Assembly (NCBI RefSeq): GCF_001194135.2
Contig: NC_068989.1
Location: 11,309,841 to 11,355,844 of the forward strand
Length of the DNA: 46,004 bases
Reading direction: 5' to 3'
Origin: Octopus bimaculoides
Lineage: Eukaryota
Both the position numbers and the translations under genes were made by a program. This document shows, piece after piece, positions 4,364 through 45,363 of this stretch; positions within the stretch are counted from its first letter, which is position 1; the number at the start of each line of letters is the position of its first letter. Below the pieces are notes generated by a model that saw only the letters and a list, made by a program, of their open reading frames with translations, made no database searches and was not told the DNA's origin.

Positions 4364-4765
4364 CTCTTTTACTCTTTTACTTGTTTCAGTCTTTTGACTG
4401 TGGCCATGCTGCAGCACCGCCTTTAGTCGAGCAAATCGACCCCAGGACTTATTCTTTGGAAGCCAAGTACTTATTCTATCAGTCACTTTTGCCGAACTGC
4501 TAAGTTACAGGGACATAAACACACCAGCATCGGTTGTCAAGCGATGTTGGGGGGACAAACACAGGCATACAAGCACATACACACACACATACATATACAT
4601 ATATATATATAGGACAGGCTTCTTTCAGTTTCCGTCTACCAAATCCACTCACAAGGCTTTGGTCGGCCCGAGGCTATAGTAGAAGACACTTGCCCAAGAT
4701 GCCACGCAGTGGGACTGAACCCTGGACCATGTGGTTGGTAAGCAAGCTATTTACCACTCATGCAG
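4364..4765 (-). mobile_element. SINE family A, near full length
   Basis: Head, internal (TA)/(CA) microsatellite and TACTCTTT tail are all present. Confidence 0.92.
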
Positions 4766-4774
4766 GTTTTCTAA

Positions 4775-5210
4775 ATATGCCAAAAATATGGATCATCATG
4801 ATGGAATCCCTTTGATTAAAGATCTACTTGATTAGAGTTGTTCTATGAGTAAAGAATGATGATAATAGTTAAGACAGCAATTCAGAGCCAGGATGCTAGT
4901 ATATTTTATAACAAAGTATCTTATGACATGTCTATCTCAATTGCTGTATATATAGTAGTGTGTGTGCGTATATATATATATTTCTAATACAGAGCAAATA
5001 TTTCAGCAGAAAATATTTGCTAACATATACCATTAATTCTATTATTATCTAGGATAAAATCATTAGAATGATAATAACAGAATCAATAATATAGACGATT
5101 ACTGGCCCAGAATTTCTGTAATTGTTGTCAATGTTTTTGTTGGTGATTTCAAAAAGAGTTTTGACTGTTATTTCTAGCAGGTAGTCATACTCAATTTGTC
5201 CTTTGATTAA

Positions 5211-5241
<31 letters not shown>

Positions 5242-5529
5242 TTGAAGATAAGCAACAAAAATTCAATAGGTTATGGCAGTACGTACGTTTCGTACAAGCT
5301 CCATTTATTCATGTAGTGAGAACACCACATAGAATGTACAATGAAAATGTACTCCTCAGCTGCATAATGGAATTTCATTTTAGAAAGACATTTTGAAGAT
5401 GTTTGCAAAAAACAAGAGTAAGAGAAGAAAACATACCATCTCGACTATGCTTTAATCATAGAACAACTATAATCAAGTAGAACTTTAATCAAAGGGATTC
5501 CATCGTGATGATCCAAATTTTTGGCATAT
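4775..5529. repeat. 80-bp inverted repeat pair (4775-4854 and 5450-5529) bracketing the HHR
   Basis: ATATGCCAAAAA...ATGAGTAAAG versus the reverse complement of 5450-5529; 5 mismatches in 80 nt by eye. Confidence 0.9.
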
Positions 5530-7151: not shown

Positions 7152-7450
7152 GTGCCAGTTACACACTGGGGTCGATGTAATCGACTTAATCCGTTTGTCT
7201 GTCCTTGTTTGTCCCCTCTATGTTTAGCCCCTTGTGGGCAGTAAAGAAATAAGAAATGATAGCATGCCGGGCGAAATGCTTAGCGGTATTTCATCTGTCT
7301 TTCCGTTCTGAGTTAAAATTCCACTGAGGTCGACTTTGCCTTTCATCCTTTCGGGGTCGATAAATTAAGTACTAGTTGCGTACTGCGGTCGATCTAATCG
7401 ACTGGCTCCCTCTCCCAAAATTTCAGGCCTTGTGCCTAGAGTAGAAAAGG
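7152..7450 (+). mobile_element. SINE family B head-to-tail dimer (tail type 1, then unit with tail type 2)
   Basis: Matches other B units. Confidence 0.88.
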
Positions 7451-8915: not shown

Positions 8916-9318
8916 AGGCGCAGGAGTGGCTGTGTGGTAAGTAACTTGCTTACCAACCACATGGTTCCGGGTTCATTCCCACTGCGTGGCAGCGTGGGTA
9001 AGTGTCTTCTACTATAGCCTCGGGCTGACCAAAGCCTTGTGAGTGGATTTGGTAGACGGAAACTGAAAGAAGCCCGTCGTATATATGTATATTTTATATA
9101 TATATATATATGCGTGTCTGTCCCCCCCACCATCGCTTGACAACTGATGCTGGTGTGTTTACGTCCCCCGTTACTTAGCAGTTCGGCAAAAAAGAGACCG
9201 ATAGAATAAGTACTAGGCTTACAAAGAATAAGTCCTGGGGTCGATTTTTCTCGACTAAAGGCGGTGCTCCAGCATGGCCGCAGTCAAATGACTGAAACAA
9301 GTAAAAGAGTAAAGAGTA
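8916..9318 (+). mobile_element. SINE family A, full length
   Basis: AGGCGCAGGAGTGGCTGTGTGG head (A box), GGTTCATTCCC (B box), internal (TA)n, GTAAAAGAGTAAAGAGTA tail. Confidence 0.95.
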
Positions 9319-11075: not shown

Positions 11076-11804
11076 NNNNNNNNNNNNNNNNNNNNNNNNN
11101 NNNNNNNNNNNNNNNNNNNNNNNNNNNNNNNNNNNNNNNNNNNNNNNNNNNNNNNNNNNNNNNNNNNNNNNNNNNNNNNNNNNNNNNNNNNNNNNNNNNN
11201 NNNNNNNNNNNNNNNNNNNNNNNNNNNNNNNNNNNNNNNNNNNNNNNNNNNNNNNNNNNNNNNNNNNNNNNNNNNNNNNNNNNNNNNNNNNNNNNNNNNN
11301 NNNNNNNNNNNNNNNNNNNNNNNNNNNNNNNNNNNNNNNNNNNNNNNNNNNNNNNNNNNNNNNNNNNNNNNNNNNNNNNNNNNNNNNNNNNNNNNNNNNN
11401 NNNNNNNNNNNNNNNNNNNNNNNNNNNNNNNNNNNNNNNNNNNNNNNNNNNNNNNNNNNNNNNNNNNNNNNNNNNNNNNNNNNNNNNNNNNNNNNNNNNN
11501 NNNNNNNNNNNNNNNNNNNNNNNNNNNNNNNNNNNNNNNNNNNNNNNNNNNNNNNNNNNNNNNNNNNNNNNNNNNNNNNNNNNNNNNNNNNNNNNNNNNN
11601 NNNNNNNNNNNNNNNNNNNNNNNNNNNNNNNNNNNNNNNNNNNNNNNNNNNNNNNNNNNNNNNNNNNNNNNNNNNNNNNNNNNNNNNNNNNNNNNNNNNN
11701 NNNNNNNNNNNNNNNNNNNNNNNNNNNNNNNNNNNNNNNNNNNNNNNNNNNNNNNNNNNNNNNNNNNNNNNNNNNNNNNNNNNNNNNNNNNNNNNNNNNN
11801 NNNN
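11076..11804. other. Assembly gap
   Basis: N run. Confidence 1.
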
Positions 11805-12754: not shown

Positions 12755-13078
12755 NNNNNNNNNNNNNNNNNNNNNNNNNNNNNNNNNNNNNNNNNNNNNN
12801 NNNNNNNNNNNNNNNNNNNNNNNNNNNNNNNNNNNNNNNNNNNNNNNNNNNNNNNNNNNNNNNNNNNNNNNNNNNNNNNNNNNNNNNNNNNNNNNNNNNN
12901 NNNNNNNNNNNNNNNNNNNNNNNNNNNNNNNNNNNNNNNNNNNNNNNNNNNNNNNNNNNNNNNNNNNNNNNNNNNNNNNNNNNNNNNNNNNNNNNNNNNN
13001 NNNNNNNNNNNNNNNNNNNNNNNNNNNNNNNNNNNNNNNNNNNNNNNNNNNNNNNNNNNNNNNNNNNNNNNNNNNNNN
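12755..13078. other. Assembly gap
   Basis: N run. Confidence 1.
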
Positions 13079-13491
13079 GAGAGAGAGAGAGAGGGGGGGG
13101 GGCTGGTGGGCTGGCTGGCTGGCAGGTAGGTTGGTAGGCAGGTTGGATTGTAGGTGGGTGGGTGGATGGCCTGCTAGTAAGGAACTCAAGATTTTCTACC
13201 TTGGTGTTTTTTAGCATCAACAATAGCTTGCAGGCAAAAAGTAAAAAACAAAAAAACAAAACAAAAACAAAAAAAACAGCAGCAGCAGCAGGCAACTGCT
13301 GCTTCTGGTGCTGCCTGACAACACAACTGATAGGAAAATAAACTGATTAAAGCATTAAAGCAAATGGATGTGCAACACTTATTTATTTATTTAATTATTT
13401 ATTCTTTTATTGACTGGAGGCTTCTTATTTGTTACTCTTATCAAGATTAAACCTTAATCCTCTCATGATACTGAACTGATTTACTCTTCAA

Positions 13492-13782: not shown

Positions 13783-14003
13783 TACTCTGTTACTCTTTTA
13801 CTTGTTTCAGTCTTTTGGCTGTGGTCATGCTGGAGCACCACCTTTAGTCAAGCAAATCGACCCCAGGATTTATTCTTTGGAAGCCTAGTACTTATTCTAT
13901 CAGTCTTTTTTGCTGAACCGCTAAGTTACGGGGACGTAAACACACCCGCATCAGTTGTCAAGCGATGTTGGGGGGACAAACACAGACACACAAACATATA
14001 CAC

Positions 14004-14051
<48 letters not shown>

Positions 14052-14313
14052 GAGAATGTACGAAAAAAGAACAATAACAGACGAGGACAGGTGGTGTAAA
14101 CAACAAAAGGATGTATTAGTTTGACACTCGTATATATATACATATACATATACATATATATATATGACGGGCTTCTTTCAGTTTCCGTCTAAGGCTTTGG
14201 TTGGCCCGAGGCTATAGTAGAAGACACTTGCCCAAGGTGCCACGCAGTGGGACTGAACCCGGAACCATGTGGTTGGTAAGCAAGCTACTTACCACACAGC
14301 CACTCCTATACCT
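13783..14313 (-). mobile_element. SINE family A carrying a nested insertion in its (TA)n
   Basis: Full A structure split by 14050-14130. Confidence 0.9.
14050..14130 (-). mobile_element. 81-bp 3' fragment of the HHR-bearing element at 37808
   Basis: Near identical to 37928-38008 in reverse; (TA)n on both sides. Confidence 0.88.
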
Positions 14314-15535: not shown

Positions 15536-15737
15536 TACTCTCTTTTACTCTTTTCAGTCATTTGACTGTGGCCATGCTGGAGCACTGCCTTTAGTTGAGC
15601 AAATCGAAGACTAGTACTTATTCTATCGGTCTCTTTTGCCGAACCGCTAGGTTATGGGGACGTAAACACACCAGCATCGGTTGTCAAGCGATGCTTGGGG
15701 GGACAAACATAGACACACAAACTATACACACACACAC

Positions 15738-15774
<37 letters not shown>

Positions 15775-15933
15775 CGACGGGCTTCTTTCAGTTTCTGCCT
15801 ACCAAATCCACTCACAAGGCTTTGGTTGGCCCGAGGCTATAGTAGAAGACACTTGCCCAAGGTGCCACACAGTGGGACTGAACCCAGAACCATGTAGTTG
15901 GTAAACAAGCTACTTACTACACAGTCACTCCTG
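15536..15933 (-). mobile_element. SINE family A (abuts a truncated B head at 15478-15534)
   Basis: Match to family A. Confidence 0.9.
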
Positions 15934-19831: not shown

Positions 19832-19841
19832 NNNNNNNNNN

Positions 19842-19930: not shown

Positions 19931-20568
19931 ACATGGTGTATTATATTCTTAAGAACTTTTTGTTGAACAAAAGTTGAACATTGGTTAGTCAGGTGCTACT
20001 TTTAGTTACACAAGTGTGCTGAGTTACTTTGCTTTCTCTCTCTCCATGATCGAGGTTTCAAATCATTTTAGATCAGGGCTTGGCGAACAGGGGCAAATTA
20101 CTTCAAGTGAGGTAAAAATGAAATTCTTGGAGGTAATGAGGACTCATTTGTAAAATTATAGGAAAAACATGTTCCTTGTTACGACATATTTTTCTCCTGG
20201 TATGAGGCAGCAGGGAAAAAGTTGCTGCCTTTTGCAACAACCTACCTTTGAGAACAAGGATTTTCCACTCAAAAAACAAAGCAGAGTAATCAATTGGATC
20301 CCGAAGACTGAATCCAAATTGCTCTGGCATCAAAATTCCCCAGTTTTGATGTCATTGTAACAAAAACGAAACATCACTTCTTCAAGACCTGAAGTAAAAA
20401 TGTTTCTAGAAAAATCCTTTTCTTTCATAATGAGGATATTAATTTTATTGCCTTTGTTTTATATTTTTTATATTTATAATTGTATTCTCCATTCAAATAA
20501 AAAAAAAAATTTTTATGCGCCCTTTTAAAGCCTAGCAAGGCTCATGGGCCCGGTTTCCTAGTTACTAT

Positions 20569-21039
20569 GGCGAAATGCTTGGTGGTATTTCGCCCATCAC
20601 TACATTCTGAGTTCACATTCCGCCTAGGTCAACTTTGCCTTTCATACTTTTGGGATTGATAAATTAAATACCAGTTGTGAGCTGGGAGTTGATCTAATCG
20701 ACTGTCCTCCACCCTGGAAATTTCAGGCCTTGTGCCTATAATAGAAAGGATTATTATTATTATTAACATGGTGGTGGGCTGGCAGAATCATTAGTGCGCC
20801 AGATGAAATGCTTAGTGGTATTTTGCCTGTCATCACGTTCTGAGTTCAAATTCCGCTGAGGCCGACTTTGCTTTTCATCCTTTTGGGTTCGATAAACTAA
20901 GTACCAGTGAAACACTGGGGTCAATGTAATTGACTAGTCTCCCCCCCACCTCCTCCGGATTTCAGGCCTTGTGCCTTTAGAAGAAAGGATTATTATCATT
21001 ATTATTATTATTATTGTTATTATTATTGTTGTTGTTGTT

Positions 21040-21077
<38 letters not shown>

Positions 21078-21321
21078 TATTATGGCAGTGATCTGGCAGA
21101 TTTGTTACCATACTGGGCAAAATGCTTAGCGGTATTTCACTCGTTGCTGCGTTCTGAGTTCAAATTCCGCCGAGGTCGTCTTTGCCTTTCATCCATTCAG
21201 AGTTGATAAAGTATGTACCAGTGAAACACTGGGGGTTGATGTAATTGACTAATCCCCTCCCCCCAAATTTCAGGCCTTATGCCTATAATACAAAGGATTA
21301 TTATTATTATTATCATCATCA

Positions 21322-24423: not shown

Positions 24424-24986
24424 GATAGAAAGAAAGAAGTGGTGTTGGTGTTGGTTTGTGGTGGTGGTGGTTGAGGAGTGGTGGGAGAATAGAAAAGTGA
24501 GAGAGAAAGAAACTCCATACCAATACCTAGCCAGCAATAGATAATGTGACCCAAATACAATGTTTAGAATCACAAGGCAATGACAGAAAACACACACACA
24601 TGTAAATTCATATATATCTATATATATCTATATATATATACACATATATATATATACCTTTATGTGTGTGTACGTATACATACATACACTGTGGTATCAA
24701 AAAAAAAATGGAAAGTAACATGCAAATTTCATTGCCTTCAAACACCCCTTTGCTTCCACCCCACCTGCTACCCCGCTTTCTGTCTATATTTCTGTATTCT
24801 TTTATTATTATTATTATTATTATTTATTATTATTATTATTATTATTATTGTCATTTTATCTTTTTTCTTTTTGCTGTTGTTGTTGTTGTTGTTGTTGTTC
24901 TTTATCAAGATTCATCCAGGTGAAACTTGTTGCTACCTTGTTTTCAATAGAGAATTTCTCTTCTCTCTCTCTCTCTCTCTCTCTCT

Positions 24987-25407
24987 NNNNNNNNNNNNNN
25001 NNNNNNNNNNNNNNNNNNNNNNNNNNNNNNNNNNNNNNNNNNNNNNNNNNNNNNNNNNNNNNNNNNNNNNNNNNNNNNNNNNNNNNNNNNNNNNNNNNNN
25101 NNNNNNNNNNNNNNNNNNNNNNNNNNNNNNNNNNNNNNNNNNNNNNNNNNNNNNNNNNNNNNNNNNNNNNNNNNNNNNNNNNNNNNNNNNNNNNNNNNNN
25201 NNNNNNNNNNNNNNNNNNNNNNNNNNNNNNNNNNNNNNNNNNNNNNNNNNNNNNNNNNNNNNNNNNNNNNNNNNNNNNNNNNNNNNNNNNNNNNNNNNNN
25301 NNNNNNNNNNNNNNNNNNNNNNNNNNNNNNNNNNNNNNNNNNNNNNNNNNNNNNNNNNNNNNNNNNNNNNNNNNNNNNNNNNNNNNNNNNNNNNNNNNNN
25401 NNNNNNA
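24987..25407. other. Assembly gap
   Basis: N run between (CT)n and (CA)n. Confidence 1.
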
Positions 25408-26842: not shown

Positions 26843-27551
26843 GGTGTGTATATGTTTGTGTGTCTGTGTTTGTCCCCCCAACATCGCTTGACAATCAATA
26901 GTGGTGTGTTTACGTCCCCGTAACTTAGCGCGGTTCAGCAAAAGAGACCGATAGAATAAGTACTAGGCTTAAAAAGAATAAGTCCTGGGGTCGATTTTCT
27001 CGATGGTGATGATGATGATGATGATGACAGCCTTTTCATGTGTAGGATTTGAACTTTGGATGAAGAAGAGGGGGGGGTAGAATTTCTCCCCACCCCTCCA
27101 AAAAAATAGAAAAGAAAAAACAGACAAATACTGCCAAGCATTCTATAAAATGCTGTAGAACAACACTGCTGATTAGCTTCCTTATGACAATGATGATGAT
27201 GATGATGACGGCAATCTATTCTGTGCCAACCGTACAGATTTATAACTAACTCACTGTCACTAGAATCTTCTTTTCTATTCAGTTCAATATCGCCGAGTCA
27301 TTTCTTCTACTATAGTTACGGGTTGGGTGTCCTAACAAAAGCAAAAATTTAAATCTATAAAAGAAAAAATGAAAATAAAACTGAAGAAGATCTAAAATAG
27401 CTCAAACAGGTATTTTACAGCCAAGTTACCTTATTTATAAGACAAACCACTCAACTATAAAATTGTTGTATTAGAATGTATATGATATAGTGTAAGGAAG
27501 TGTGTGGAGGTTCACACATGCACATACATACTGTGCATAACATCTTGGGCA

Positions 27552-27963
27552 TACTCTTTTACTTGTTTTAGTCATTTGACTGCGGCCTTGCTGGAGCACC
27601 GCCTTTAGTCGAGCAAATCGACCCCAGGACTTATTCTTTGTAAGCCTAGTACTTATGCCATCGGTCTGTTTTGCCGAACCGCTAAGTGACGGGGACATAA
27701 ACATACCACCTTCGGTTGTCAAGCGATGTTGGGAGACAAACACAGACACACAAACACAGACACACAAACACACACACACACATATATATATACATATATA
27801 CGACGGGCTTCTTTCAGTTTCCATCTACCAAATCCACTCACAAGGCTTTGGCCAGCCCGAGGCTATAGTAGAAGACACTTGCCCAAGGTGCCACGCAGTG
27901 GGACTGAACCCAGAACCATGTGGTTGGTAAGCAAGCTACTTACCACACAGCCACTCCTGCGCC
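27552..27963 (-). mobile_element. SINE family A, full length, 23-bp perfect TSD
   Basis: TACTGTGCATAACATCTTGGGCA at 27529-27551 and 27964-27986. Confidence 0.96.
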
Positions 27964-28546
27964 TACTGTGCATAACATCTTGGGCAGGTGTCATTTTTTT
28001 ATAGCCTTGGATTGTGGTCACTTCTGAATGAAATTAAAGTCAGAGAGAGAGTGTGAGGGGGGGGGCGGTTCTTGGAAGACAGAATGAAGCTTTCTTATAA
28101 GATAGATTAAGGCTTTCAATCAAGAGGTGATCTATGATGTGGAATACCTCCAGGTGACTTAGGGGATTTTTAAGGACCAGTTCTTGGTACTGTCGTGATT
28201 CTTTTCTTTCTTCCTTTTTAAATTAACTGGTTGAATGACTGTGTAACATATTCTATTGCTAGTTCTTAACATGGACAGTCACACCCCCTTGGGGTTCTTT
28301 GTAAGGTCACAAGGTGGTGGGGCAGCAAGTATCAAGAGGGTGTTGTGGGAGGCACTATATTTAGAACTACATTATCCAAGGTGTTATTTTTTGAAAGTCT
28401 GTAGCAGATGATTTAAGGGAAACTTAGCTGCTATTTCTAGCAGGCCTTAAGTTTGCTGAGAGCAGGCCTGGCTAACTCGAATTACATTGTGGGCCACTTT
28501 AATCACAGAGAGTTTTTTGAGGGCCACTTGTATGCTTTATGCACTG

Positions 28547-29140: not shown

Positions 29141-29451
29141 GTGTAGAGTCTCCTTTGCTGTTGCTAACCATAAAATGAATGCGGAACTATATTAGTTCTG
29201 GGTTGCAAGATAATTCATGAACATCCCCATGTCTGTCATTTCTTTCTTGGCATTCACAATCTCAGTAAGAAATATGTTTTGTCACTATTTTTTTTAAAGT
29301 TTACCTGTATTTTTTTTATTGTTGTCAAAGGAAGATTATTTAGTTACCAAGTTATACAAAAGTGGTTGGTTATAGCACTATGCTGTTGCTGTTCCTAAAT
29401 GTTTTTTTTTTTAATCTCCTTTGACCCCTATCTGTTAAAATTTGATTACAT

Positions 29452-29682
29452 AGGCGCAGGAGTGGCTGTGTGGTAAGTAGCTTGCTTACCAACCACATGG
29501 TTCTGGGTTCAGTCCCACTGCGTGGCATCTTGGGCAAGTGTCTTCCACTATAGCCTCAGGCCGACGAAAGCCTTGTGAGTGGAGTTGGTTTACGGAAACT
29601 GAAAGAAGCCCGTCGTATATATGTATATATATATGTTTGTGTGTGTGTATATGTTTGTGTGTCTGTCTTTGCCCCCCCCCCC
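29452..29682 (+). mobile_element. SINE family A, 5' half
   Basis: Near-consensus head. Confidence 0.9.
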
Positions 29683-29687
29683 ACACC

Positions 29688-30220
29688 ATCAACTTAATCC
29701 TTTTGTCCTTGTTTGTCCCTTTTGTGTTTAGCCCCTTGTGGGCAGTAAAGAAATAAGAAATGTTAGCATGCAGGGCAAAATGCTTAGTGGTATTTCATCT
29801 GGTGTTACGTTCTGAGTTCAAATTCCGCTGAGGTTGAATTTGCCTTTCATCCTTTCGGGGTCGATAAATTAAGTACCAGTTACGCACTGGGGTCAATGTA
29901 ATCGACTTAATCCCTTTGTCCTTGTTTGTCCCTTTCGTGTTTAGCCCCTTGTGGGCTAAATCGACTTAATTCCTTTGACTGTCGTTGTTTGTCCCCTCTA
30001 TGTTTAGCCCCTTGTGGACAATAAAAAAATAAGAATCGTTAGCACGTCGGGGGCGAAATGCTAAGCGGTATTTCATTAGTCTTTACGTTCTGAGTTCAAA
30101 TTCCACCAAGGTCGACTTTGCCTTTCATCCTTTCGGGGCTGATAAATTAAGTAGCAGTTATGTACTGGGGTTGATCTAATCGGCTGCACTCATCCCCCAA
30201 AATTTCAGGCTTTGTGCCTA
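29688..30220 (+). mobile_element. SINE family B array with duplicated tail
   Basis: Tail, unit, extra tail, unit. Confidence 0.88.
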
Positions 30221-30463
30221 NNNNNNNNNNNNNNNNNNNNNNNNNNNNNNNNNNNNNNNNNNNNNNNNNNNNNNNNNNNNNNNNNNNNNNNNNNNNNNNN
30301 NNNNNNNNNNNNNNNNNNNNNNNNNNNNNNNNNNNNNNNNNNNNNNNNNNNNNNNNNNNNNNNNNNNNNNNNNNNNNNNNNNNNNNNNNNNNNNNNNNNN
30401 NNNNNNNNNNNNNNNNNNNNNNNNNNNNNNNNNNNNNNNNNNNNNNNNNNNNNNNNNNNNNNN
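30221..30463. other. Assembly gap
   Basis: N run. Confidence 1.
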
Positions 30464-35287: not shown

Positions 35288-35694
35288 GTAGTGTGGTTTA
35301 GAAGCTCGTTTTGTAATCATGTGGTTTCATGGTTCAGCTTCACCACATGGTACTTTTGTGAAGTGTCTTTTATTATAGCCCTGATCCAACCAATGCCTTG
35401 TGAGTGAATTTGGTAGACAGAAACTGTGAGGAAGCCTGGCAGAAACATTAGCATGCCAGGCGAAATGCTTAGCGGTATTTCGTCTGCCGCTACGTTCTGA
35501 GTTCAAATTCCGTCGAGGTCGACTTTGCCTTTCATCCTTTCGGGGTCAATTAAATAAGTACCAGTTACGCACTGGGGTCGATATAATCGACTTAATCCCT
35601 TTGTCTGTCCTTGTTTGTCCCCTCTGTGTGTAGCCCCTTGTGGGCAGTAAAGAAATAGGAAACTGTGTGAAGCCTGTTGTGTACACACACTCAT

Positions 35695-40301: not shown

Positions 40302-40663
40302 GGTCGACTTTGCCTTTCATCCTTTCGGGGTCGATAAATTAAGTACCAGTTACGCACTGGGGTCGATGTAATCGACTTAATTCATTTGTCTGTCCTTGTT
40401 TGTCCTCTGTATGTTTAGCCCCTTGTGGGCAGTAAAGAAACAAGAGATGTTAGCACGCTGGGCGAAATGCTTAGCGGTATTTCGTCTGCTGCTATGTTCT
40501 GAGTTCAAATTCTGCTGAGGTCGACTTTGCCTTTCATCCTTTCGGGGTCGATAAATTAAGTACCAGTTACGCACTGGGGTCGATGTAATCAACTTAATCC
40601 CTTTGTCTTTCCTTGTTTGTCCCCTCTGTGTTTAGCCCCTTGTGGACAATAAAAAAATAAGAA
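40302..40663 (+). mobile_element. SINE family B head-to-tail dimer
   Basis: Two successive units after the 10-N gap. Confidence 0.9.
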
Positions 40664-44655: not shown

Positions 44656-45144
44656 CATCATCATTGTCATCATTTAACATCCGTTGTCCTTACTGGCATG
44701 ATATCTATCTATCTGTCTGTCTGTCCGTCCATCCATCTATCCATCCATCCATCCATCCATATATATATGTATGTATGTGTTTGTGTGTATGTATTCCCTG
44801 GTATGACGAGTTAAAAAAAGTTGTGCCCAGTCACTTAGAATAAAGAACTCCAAAATATGTTTGAGAATGAATAAACATTTGATTGGTAAATGTTAGTCCA
44901 CTGTGGGTTCAAGGGTTAGCGATGATGATGGTTTTTCCTTCCTTCTTGACTAATGTTATGGAGTATGTTCCAGTCTGTGGGCTTTTTTTTTTTGGTTTTG
45001 TTTTTGTACTTACTCATAATTGTATTGCAGATTACCTTTGTGATAAGTTGCTTTCTCCATTTCATATAGGTTTTTTTAGTTTTGTCTGAACTGACAAGGA
45101 TGTTATTTGATAACCTTCATGTCTTAATTTTACTAAAAACTAAG

Positions 45145-45363
45145 ATGGGAAGCTAGCAGAAATGTTGGCACGCCAGGCAAAATGCTTAGCGGTATTTCGT
45201 CTGTCTTTACGTTCTGAGTTCAAATTCCGCCAAGGTTGAATTTGTCTTTCATCCTTTCAGGGCTGATAAATTAAGTACCAGTTGCATACTGGAGTTGATC
45301 TAATTGACTGGCCCCCTCCCCCCAAAATTTTGGGCTTTGTGTCTAGAGTAGAAAAGAATTCTA
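45145..45363 (+). mobile_element. SINE family B (tail type 2)
   Basis: Full unit. Confidence 0.9.

What the first reader, a model, noticed from the sequence alone, without database searches (positions are those of the whole stretch)
5259..5375. Apparently intact type I hammerhead ribozyme with a long (~23-bp) folded stem II
Seen on the minus strand: all conserved core positions are present (C3-U4-G5-A6-G7-G8-A9 at 5359-5353; G10.1-C11.1; G12-A13-A14-A15.1 at 5291-5288; G16.2-U16.1-A17 at 5282-5280). Stem I is GCAG/CUGC, 1-nt bulge, UUAU/AUAA, 2x6 internal loop, AAAUUC/GAAUUU. Stem III is the self-complementary 8-mer ACGUACGU. The 51 nt inside stem II fold into UUCAUU/AAUGGA, AUUC/GAAU and AUGUGGUG/CACUACAU with a UUCU loop. 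An internal second UGUAC (5340-5336) can capture the 5' GUACA and make an inactive hairpin, so the RNA could act as a two-state switch. Established: Penelope-like elements and retrozymes carry type I HHRs with short palindromic stem III that can cleave as dimers, usually with short stem II. Inference: this is a long-stem-II variant family that I do not recognise as described, predicted to cut between 5280 and 5279.
Basis: partly seen in the sequence, partly recalled or inferred. Interest (0 to 1): 0.9.

Follow-up and report, generated by a model that had tools for sequence, protein, structure and literature searches.

The report
Octopus retrotransposon hammerhead with long arm
The stretch is a real hammerhead self-cleaving RNA motif, but it is the standard ribozyme of a Penelope-like jumping gene of Octopus bimaculoides, here in a dead truncated copy. 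Its one unusual feature is a roughly 60-nucleotide second arm that makes standard searches miss it.

Summary
Minus strand 5365-5273 carries every conserved type I hammerhead (HHR) position at the coordinates given, with helix I, a 61-nt helix II and the palindromic helix III ACGUACGU. A strict motif scan finds it once in the window and never in 200 shuffles.

It is not a free-standing ribozyme gene. Window 5451-5241 (minus) is a 5'-truncated, 211-bp 3' end of a Penelope-like element (PLE) of Octopus bimaculoides, inserted at a (TA)n microsatellite. Longer copies have an ORF ending in a GIY-YIG endonuclease about 760 nt upstream of the HHR. They also show variable 5' truncation, head-to-head inverted partners and two alternative 3' ends. 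The 3' half of the motif occurs at least 678 times in the genome.

PLE HHRs with palindromic helix III that act as dimers are already known. What is unusual is helix II: a 5-bp base plus a roughly 51-nt imperfect hairpin. This drops the Rfam Hammerhead_1 score to 19.4 bits, below the cut-off of 34. The whole block is conserved between PLE subfamilies, but covariation for the extension is weak. A different competing hairpin that sequesters the core is predicted in every variant. Cleavage was not tested. I rate it a new variant of a known kind, of moderate interest.

The parts
5241..5451 (-). 5'-truncated 3'-terminal fragment (211 bp) of a Penelope-like element. It ends ...CTTATCTTCAAA.
   Evidence: blastn of genomic copies. 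All copies share this 3' end or run on 108 nt further, and their 5' ends vary.
5273..5365 (-). Type I hammerhead ribozyme motif (helix I inner part, core, helix II, helix III).
   Evidence: Rfam RF00163 full-length alignment at 19.4 bits. Motif scan: 1 hit against 0 in 200 shuffles.
5353..5359 (-). Core C3-U4-G5-A6-G7-G8-A9 (CUGAGGA).
5292..5352 (-). Helix II, 61 nt. The base is GUACA (5352-5348) paired with UGUAC (5296-5292). The extension at 5347-5297 folds as UUCAUU/AAUGGA, AUUC/GAAU and AUGUGGUG/CACUACAU with a UUCU loop.
   Evidence: Constrained fold. Conserved across subfamilies. Pair counts.
5288..5291 (-). Core G12-A13-A14 plus A15.1.
5281..5288 (-). Helix III, the palindrome ACGUACGU. 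It gives 2 bp plus a GUAC loop in a monomer and 8 bp between two copies.
5279..5280 (-). Predicted cleavage site, between A17 (5280) and C1.1 (5279).
   Evidence: Position in the Rfam alignment. Cleavage itself was not tested.
5360..5367 (-). Helix I 5' strand, UUAUGCAG.
5271..5279 (-). Helix I 3' strand, CUGC(C)AUAA with one bulged base. This copy has C at 5275 where the family has U.
5337..5364 (-). Predicted competing hairpin, UGCAG.UGAGGA (5364-5353) paired with UUUUCA.UUGUA (5347-5337). It sequesters the helix I 5' strand and C3-A9.
   Evidence: Present in the minimum-energy fold of the window copy and of all 7 other variants folded. No covariation.
5211..5240 (-). A8 run (5240-5233) and (TA)11 (5232-5211) directly 3' of the element. 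(TA)n is the usual flank of this family's 3' ends.

Best explanation
The feature is the hammerhead ribozyme (HHR) motif carried near the 3' end of a Penelope-like retrotransposon (PLE) family of Octopus bimaculoides. The window holds a 211-bp, 5'-truncated, dead-on-arrival copy inserted at a (TA)n microsatellite.

The motif is a type I HHR with all core nucleotides and an 8-bp helix I with one bulge. Its palindromic helix III (ACGUACGU) gives only 2 bp in a monomer and 8 bp in a two-copy double hammerhead. Helix II has a normal 5-bp base followed by a roughly 51-nt imperfect hairpin.

Inferred mechanism, taken from what is known of PLE and newt-type HHRs:
- In transcripts of active (tandem or read-through) elements, two HHR copies pair through helix III.
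- Each copy then cuts after A17, which trims unit-length RNA.
- As a monomer the RNA prefers inactive folds, so cleavage is conditional and probably slow.

The long helix II is a lineage-specific elaboration kept by the active lineage. Its role is unknown; it could serve folding control or protein binding. The window copy itself probably does nothing unless it is read through.
For: Shown by tool results:
- The core and helices sit at the stated coordinates.
- Rfam Hammerhead_1 aligns full length with a 53-nt loop II insert.
- The motif is absent from 200 shuffles.
- The window lies in a 2.34-Gb genome, identified as O. bimaculoides.
- Copies share the 3' end and have variable 5' ends.
- Head-to-head inverted partners are frequent.
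- (TA)n flanks and two alternative 3' ends 108 nt apart occur about 12:12 among 24 copies. This matches the PLE 'tail' signature (PMC11167929).
- An ORF ending about 760 nt upstream of the HHR hits Pfam GIY-YIG at 27.6 bits, above the cut-off of 22.6.
- That endonuclease-region protein has 8800 first-look candidates in the genome, with open frames over 900 aa.
- The 22-nt 3' half of the HHR occurs 678 times, against 0 for the reversed control.
- PLE copies whose endonuclease region is only 53-77% identical in amino acids keep the same HHR with the long helix II.
- The HHR block is among the best conserved parts of the 3' UTR, at 0.84-0.94 identity against about 0.7 elsewhere.
- The double hammerhead scores -59.8 kcal/mol against -45.2 for two monomer HHR folds and -57.0 for two monomer minimum-energy folds.

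Established knowledge: PLEs carry type I HHRs with a palindromic helix III in their pseudo-LTRs (pLTRs), and these cleave poorly and as dimers (PMC4209133, PMC6765202).
Against: - The Rfam score (19.4) is below the gathering score (34), and the whole-window search found nothing.
- The thermodynamic model puts the monomer HHR fold at about 7e-5 of the ensemble. The dimer minimum-energy fold (-65.5) is also not the HHR.
- Only one pair shows a change on both sides, and several shared variants break predicted pairs in the helix II extension.
- No conserved loop-loop tertiary contacts could be recognised.
- A reverse transcriptase domain was not confirmed by Pfam or PDB searches. Motifs such as YRDD are seen only by eye.
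- A related O. sinensis PLE copy shows no recognisable HHR.
- HHR cleavage was dispensable for insertion of an anole PLE in vitro (PMC11167929).
Confidence: 0.75

Rival explanations
1. The block is a catalytically dead relic. It descends from a PLE hammerhead, but the 51-nt insertion in helix II, with competing folds, has abolished self-cleavage. The sequence is conserved for another job, for example as a 3'-UTR structure recognised by the element's reverse transcriptase.
For: - The minimum-energy fold and ensemble disfavour the HHR fold.
- The Rfam score is below threshold.
- Covariation is weak.
- UUUUCAUU is invariant while its HHR-fold partner AAUGGA varies.
- PLE HHRs are slow in vitro and were dispensable for insertion in vitro (PMC4209133, PMC11167929).
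Against: - All 12 sequence-constrained core positions, G10.1-C11.1, A15.1-U16.1 and the helix I and II bases are kept between subfamilies with diverged ORFs. A mere protein-binding hairpin would not require this.
- Helix II extensions beyond the first base pairs are tolerated in engineered hammerheads (my own knowledge, not tested here).
Confidence: 0.17
2. The RNA is a two-state ribozyme switch, alternating between an inactive hairpin and the active hammerhead. In the reader's version the internal UGUAC (5340-5336) captures GUACA. In a modified version UUUUCAUUGYA (5347-5337) pairs with the helix I 5' strand and C3-A9 (5364-5353), and dimerisation or a factor releases it.
For: - The modified hairpin is in the minimum-energy fold of all 8 variants folded.
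- Its 3' strand is invariant in 40 sequences.
- Two variants, U to C at column 38 and G7 to A, strengthen it.
Against:
- There are no changes on both sides, and shuffles do as well, for the modified hairpin.
- One strand is the invariant catalytic core, so its conservation says nothing.
- Competing folds are common in AU-rich RNA.
Confidence: 0.2
3. It is a non-LTR retrozyme: a short non-autonomous tandem repeat that makes small circular RNAs through HHR cleavage.
For: - The HHR is type I, the sequence has low GC, and the window copy is short.
- Retrozymes are thought to derive from PLE pseudo-LTRs (pLTRs) (10.64898/2026.07.22.740005).
Against: - Copies are not short tandem arrays. They are 3'-anchored, 5'-truncated pieces of a multi-kb element with a GIY-YIG ORF, often in head-to-head pairs.
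Confidence: 0.04
4. It is a chance match to the hammerhead consensus.
For: At 19.4 bits the score would not be significant in a whole-genome search.
Against: - There are 0 hits in 200 shuffles.
- The motif lies where PLEs carry their HHR.
- Helix III matches the Rfam consensus palindrome.
- It is conserved in diverged subfamilies.
Confidence: 0.01

Closest known systems
Hammerhead ribozymes of Penelope-like elements (Cervera and de la Pena 2014, PMC4209133; Lunse et al. 2017; Rfam RF00163 Hammerhead_1)
   Same: - Type I topology with a full conserved core.
- A minimal palindromic helix III that implies dimeric action.
- A location in the 3'/pseudo-LTR (pLTR) region of a retroelement with a GIY-YIG endonuclease.
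- Many near-identical genomic copies.
   Different: - Helix II spans 61 nt (about 24 bp in four segments), against 4 bp in canonical metazoan HHRs and 6-8 bp in described PLE min-HHRs.
- The Rfam score falls below the gathering cut-off for that reason.
- No recognisable loop 1/loop 2 contact.
Newt satellite 2 and axolotl retrozyme hammerheads (Forster 1988; PMC7229834)
   Same: - Type I HHR.
- A 1-2 bp helix III with a palindromic tetraloop.
- The monomer is poor and the dimer is active.
   Different: - Those sit in about 330-bp tandem repeats and make circular RNAs.
- Their helix II is short, with conserved loop contacts.
- Here the HHR is part of an autonomous PLE, and its copies are dispersed.
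Second octopus HHR family seen here (L031, L034, L038, L039 against the short forms L032, L033, L040-L042)
   Same: - Same genome, type I, with a quasi-palindromic 8-nt helix III.
- Exists with a roughly 63-nt insert in loop II.
   Different: - Helix I and helix II sequences are unrelated.
- Its insert does not fold into one long helix.
- The long forms still pass the Rfam cut-off, at 34-39 bits.
- No GIY-YIG ORF was seen within 1.5 kb.
Naiad PLE 'HHR_half_core' cases (Craig et al. 2021, PMC8557442)
   Same: CUGANGA and GAAA lie in the 3' UTR of a PLE but 35-50 nt apart, so standard descriptors reject them.
   Different: - Naiads have an N-terminal endonuclease, whereas here the endonuclease is C-terminal.
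- Those cases were not shown to fold as hammerheads, and I could not inspect them.

Membership tests
Hammerhead ribozyme, type I (Rfam RF00163) | Conserved core C3 U4 G5 A6 N7 G8 A9, G12 A13 A14, A15.1-U16.1, and H17 that is not G | tested here: met
   All are present at 5359-5353, 5291-5288, 5281 and 5280.
Hammerhead ribozyme, type I (Rfam RF00163) | Three helices around the core with helix I open, and a G10.1-C11.1 pair | tested here: met
   Rfam alignment of model positions 1-45. Constrained fold. Helices I, II-base and III are 98-99% paired in 40 copies.
Hammerhead ribozyme, type I (Rfam RF00163) | Score at or above Rfam's gathering cut-off (34 bits) | tested here: not met
   The score is 19.4 bits and the whole-window search gave no hit. 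The shortfall goes with the 53-nt insert. Every model position is matched.
Hammerhead ribozyme, type I (Rfam RF00163) | Site-specific self-cleavage after position 17 | not testable with these tools
   This needs in vitro transcription or RNA end mapping.
Hammerhead ribozyme, type I (Rfam RF00163) | Helix I / helix II tertiary contact (extended hammerhead) | tested here: inconclusive
   Internal loops exist 5 bp into helix II and 8 bp into helix I. The helix II loop's 3' side varies (GCU, GUU, GUG, UU) between subfamilies.
Dimeric (double) hammerhead | Palindromic helix III/loop III that pairs fully between two copies | tested here: met
   ACGUACGU is self-complementary. The double-HHR energy is -59.8 kcal/mol, against -45.2 for two monomer HHR folds.
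Penelope-like element (PLE) | ORF with a GIY-YIG endonuclease | tested here: met
   Pfam PF01541 scores 27.6 and 27.2 bits (cut-off 22.6) in unbroken frames of L077 and L075. These end about 760 nt upstream of the HHR.
Penelope-like element (PLE) | Reverse transcriptase domain N-terminal to the endonuclease | tested here: inconclusive
   A fragment upstream of the endonuclease shows FYSSIS, MGSSDSAEI, LYRDD and NFLD motifs by eye. There is no Pfam or PDB hit. Open frames of 900-1200 aa exist, but I could not fetch them.
Penelope-like element (PLE) | Insertion anatomy: 5' truncation, an inverted 5'-truncated partner, an optional 'tail' (two 3' ends) and microsatellite targets | tested here: met
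   The tail here is 108 nt, against the 30-40 bp described (PMC11167929, PMC8557442).
Penelope-like element (PLE) | HHR within the pseudo-LTR (pLTR) / 3' region | tested here: met
   The HHR lies 39 nt (short end) or 147 nt (long end) upstream of the 3' terminus. A direct pLTR-ORF-pLTR tandem was not seen in the loci I could fetch.
Non-LTR retrozyme | Short (150-450 bp) non-coding tandem repeats, each with a type I HHR | tested here: not met
   Copies are dispersed, 3'-anchored truncations of a coding element. Only one local 61-nt duplication appeared among the first 100 places.

The most novel reading that the evidence does not exclude
Large structured insertions in helix/loop II define an overlooked class of PLE hammerheads. 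Two unrelated families in octopus carry them. In this family the insert is a functional module that gates cleavage through a core-sequestering alternative hairpin. Standard descriptors and Rfam thresholds miss such motifs, so some PLE clades reported as lacking hammerheads (the Naiad 'HHR_half_core' cases) may in fact carry them.
Probability: 0.2. Interest if true: 0.6.

Novelty: new variant of a known kind. Interest (0 to 1): 0.4.

Why it matters
PLE hammerheads are known, but their role and their supposed absence from some PLE clades are open questions.

A conserved, high-copy PLE hammerhead has a 61-nt helix II and scores 15 bits below Rfam's cut-off. This shows that surveys based on descriptors and covariance-model thresholds can miss real motifs.

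It also offers a natural test of how much helix II elaboration the ribozyme tolerates, and of whether the extension regulates cleavage.

For annotating this window it matters little. The copy is a dead 211-bp retrotransposon fragment.

Tried and rejected
- **Rfam.** The gathering search of the window and an E<=10 search of 351 nt found no hammerhead. Only a 105-nt search showed it.
- **Element boundaries.** I first took the 211-nt unit with its A-run for a SINE-like or retrozyme element. I rejected this once longer copies extended both ways to a GIY-YIG ORF.
- **Reverse transcriptase.** Pfam, PDB phmmer, a 4-sequence profile against PDB and two homologue searches gave no reverse transcriptase assignment. 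A Tara contig with a weak RVT_1 gene turned out to be unrelated.
- **Cross-species copies.** One O. sinensis locus has a related reverse-transcriptase-like and endonuclease region but no HHR. Two metagenome pattern scans found nothing. A look-up of an O. bimaculoides protein found no record.
- **Family 2 insert.** It shows no convincing extended helix and no ORF nearby.
- **Literature.** I found no description of a helix II over 20 bp in a PLE HHR. Lunse et al. 2017 and the supplement of Craig et al. 2021 are not held, so this is not proof of absence.

Full report
**1. The observation**

- CUGAGGA (C3-A9) lies at 5359-5353.
- G10.1 is at 5352 and C11.1 at 5292.
- GAAA lies at 5291-5288.
- The self-complementary ACGUACGU lies at 5288-5281.
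- A17 is at 5280.
- CUGC at 5279-5276 pairs with GCAG at 5363-5360.

Helix I is 4 bp, a 1-nt bulge, 4 bp, an internal loop and 6 bp. Helix II is GUACA/UGUAC followed by segments of 7, 4 and 8 bp with a UUCU loop.

Rfam's whole-window search and a 351-nt search at E<=10 found no hammerhead. In a 105-nt search Hammerhead_1 (RF00163) aligns over its full length to 5365-5273. It places a 53-nt insert in loop II and scores 19.4 bits, against a gathering score of 34.

A strict motif scan of my own hits once in the window, at 5276-5359 on the minus strand. It hits nothing in 200 dinucleotide-preserving shuffles. The motif is real and is not a chance match.

**2. What it belongs to**

The window is G000:C9:11309841-11355844 of a 2.34-Gb genome. 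A protein hit names Octopus bimaculoides, and its longest contig has exactly the length of C3.

The 117-nt stretch has at least 46 scored copies at 97-100% identity out of 1205 first-look candidates. The 22-nt 3' half (TTGTACGAAACGTACGTACTGC) occurs 678 times, against 0 for the reversed control.

Comparison of copies shows the window copy is a fragment, 5451-5241 on the minus strand:
- All copies share the 3' end ...CTTATCTTCAAA or continue for a further 108 nt (...AAATCTACATTAT). The split is about 12:12 among 24 copies.
- Both 3' ends usually abut (TA)n.
- The 5' ends are variable.
- Head-to-head inverted, 5'-truncated partners are frequent. About 20 of the first 100 exact-match places form such pairs within 400 bp.

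Longer copies (L075, L077, L078) run contiguously from the HHR upstream into an open frame that ends about 760 nt before the HHR. That frame hits Pfam GIY-YIG above its cut-off, at 27.6 against 22.6 bits. A cysteine-rich linker precedes the domain.

The endonuclease-region protein has 8800 first-look candidates in the genome, some within open frames of 900-1200 aa.

Further upstream, one copy has a fragment with reverse-transcriptase-like motifs (FYSSIS, MGSSDSAEI, LYRDD, NFLD) seen by eye. No Pfam or PDB search confirmed a reverse transcriptase.

Several features are the published hallmarks of Penelope-like elements (PLEs) (PMC8557442, PMC11167929, PMC4209133):
- a GIY-YIG endonuclease in a retroelement;
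- 5' truncation and inverted partners;
- microsatellite targets;
- two 3' ends (the 'tail');
- an HHR near the 3' end.

The feature is therefore a PLE hammerhead. It is not a retrozyme or a stand-alone ribozyme gene.

**3. Is the hammerhead maintained?**

Within the young family, substitutions hit core and non-core positions equally: 1.7% against 1.9% in 40 copies. They include G5A, G12A and C3G, so individual insertions decay neutrally. The window copy has all core positions intact. It differs from the family majority only by C for U at 5275, the bulged base of helix I.

Six copies come from PLE subfamilies whose endonuclease region is only 53-77% identical in amino acids. They carry the same HHR with the same long helix II. 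In an alignment of their 3' UTRs the HHR block is among the best conserved stretches, at 0.84-0.94 identity against about 0.7 on average. This argues for constraint on the active lineage over the whole block, extension included.

Pair counts on 40 distinct sequences are consistent with the fold but weak:
- 97.4% of cells are paired.
- One pair changed on both sides (C-G to U-A, 3 sequences, probably one event).
- There are several G-U/A-U and C-G/U-G switches.
- Some shared variants break predicted pairs in the middle of the extension.

The terminal 8-bp hairpin and the 5-bp base of helix II are the best kept parts. The distal helix I (AAAUUC/GAAUUU) is lost in two subfamily copies.

**4. Folding and mechanism**

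The nearest-neighbour model does not favour the monomeric hammerhead. The HHR fold scores -22.6 against a minimum-energy fold of -28.5 kcal/mol, about 7e-5 of the ensemble.

A domain-swapped double hammerhead, with an 8-bp intermolecular helix III, scores -59.8 kcal/mol. Two monomer HHR folds score -45.2, and two monomer minimum-energy folds score -57.0. The dimer minimum-energy fold (-65.5) is still another structure. This fits the known behaviour of PLE, newt and axolotl hammerheads: a poor monomer and dimer-dependent, slow cleavage (PMC4209133, PMC7229834, PMC6765202).

The site reads GCAC or GUAU in the sister subfamilies.

A different competitor appears in the minimum-energy fold of all eight variants folded. 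UGCAG.UGAGGA (5364-5353) pairs with UUUUCA.UUGYA (5347-5337), which sequesters the helix I 5' strand and C3-A9. Its 3' strand is invariant in all 40 sequences, whereas that strand's partner in the HHR fold (AAUGGA) varies. There is no covariation for this hairpin, and shuffles score as well. I treat it as a lead, not a finding. A GUACG-AAA-CGUAC hairpin also competes on the 3' side.

My committed reading has three parts:
- The motif trims PLE transcripts after A17 (5280|5279) when two copies pair.
- The long helix II is a lineage-specific elaboration whose role is unknown. It could serve folding control or protein binding.
- The window copy is inert unless read through.

Cleavage itself is inferred, not shown.

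**5. Comparison with what is known, and novelty**

Canonical metazoan type I HHRs have a helix II of about 4 bp. The PLE min-HHRs described have 6-8 bp (PMC4209133). I found no description of a helix II of about 24 bp (61 nt) in a PLE HHR. Two key sources were not available, so this is not proof of absence.

Craig et al. note Naiad PLEs with CUGANGA and GAAA 35-50 nt apart, which they could not call hammerheads (PMC8557442). This may be the same phenomenon.

Long inserts are not unique to this family. A second, unrelated HHR family in the same genome exists in short forms (42-49 nt) and long forms (98-108 nt). The long forms carry a roughly 63-nt loop II insert and still pass the Rfam cut-off. 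That insert does not fold into one helix.

I therefore file this as a new variant of a known kind, not a new class.

**6. Verdict**

- Interest is moderate (0.4). The motif is ordinary in kind and is a dead copy in this window. It is still a clear example of a conserved, high-copy hammerhead that standard thresholds miss, and it has a testable regulatory hypothesis.

Noticed in passing
L031 1501-1608, L034 1501-1605, L038 1501-1605, L039 1501-1608 (all minus strand). Short forms: L032, L033, L035, L037, L040-L042.: A second, unrelated type I HHR family is present (helix I GUAC, helix II ACCC/GGGU, quasi-palindromic 8-nt helix III). It exists in short forms (42-49 nt) and in long forms with a roughly 63-nt insert in loop II. 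The long forms score 34-39 bits on Rfam Hammerhead_1. No GIY-YIG ORF lies within 1.5 kb.
   Followed up: partly
L016 1639-1746, L004, L017, L028 and others. The window copy has the short end at 5241.: The PLE family has two alternative 3' ends 108 nt apart, each usually abutting (TA)n, in roughly equal numbers among 24 copies. This resembles the PLE 'tail', but it is about three times longer than the 30-40 bp described.
   Followed up: partly
window 5485-5495 and 5200-5210: An 11-nt perfect inverted repeat (CCTTTGATTAA / TTAATCAAAGG) brackets the insertion. TGATTAA also directly abuts the element's 5' end, and TTAATCA directly follows the (TA)n. This may be an inverted target duplication or a pre-existing palindrome.
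   Followed up: no
L076 7210-8300 (plus strand); proteins P0001-P0003: The PLE ORF has a long asparagine-rich low-complexity stretch of several hundred residues between the reverse-transcriptase-like part and the endonuclease. NCBI names related fragments 'myb-like protein D' or 'DDB_G...-like'.
   Followed up: no
L092 5944-7862 (Octopus sinensis CM016860.1): A related PLE copy is 70-72% identical in DNA over the reverse-transcriptase-like and endonuclease parts. It has no recognisable hammerhead in the roughly 1.1 kb between the endonuclease and a (TA)n tract.
   Followed up: partly
window 7152-7415, 20545-21261, 29656-30197, 35341-35604, 40302-40606, 45058-45321: There are 9-11 copies of a SINE-like repeat of about 170-260 nt (core GGTCGACTTTGCCTTTCATCCTTTCGGGGTCGATAAATTAAGTACCAGT), in both orientations. 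A second repeat of about 200 nt lies at 4364-4770, 8916-9092, 13785-14308, 15728-15933, 27546-27965 and 29451-29678.
   Followed up: no
window 5312-5365 (plus strand): A weak match to the archaeal C/D-box snoRNA model sR9 (18.4 bits, gathering score 36) lies antisense to the hammerhead. It is most likely chance.
   Followed up: no
window 11766-11804, 12755-13093, 19832-19841, 24971-25406, 30433-30463: Runs of N (assembly gaps) lie next to microsatellites. The top 'inverted repeats' reported by the repeat finder (I1-I5) appear to be these N runs. I saw Ns at one edge only and did not read the runs in full.
   Followed up: no
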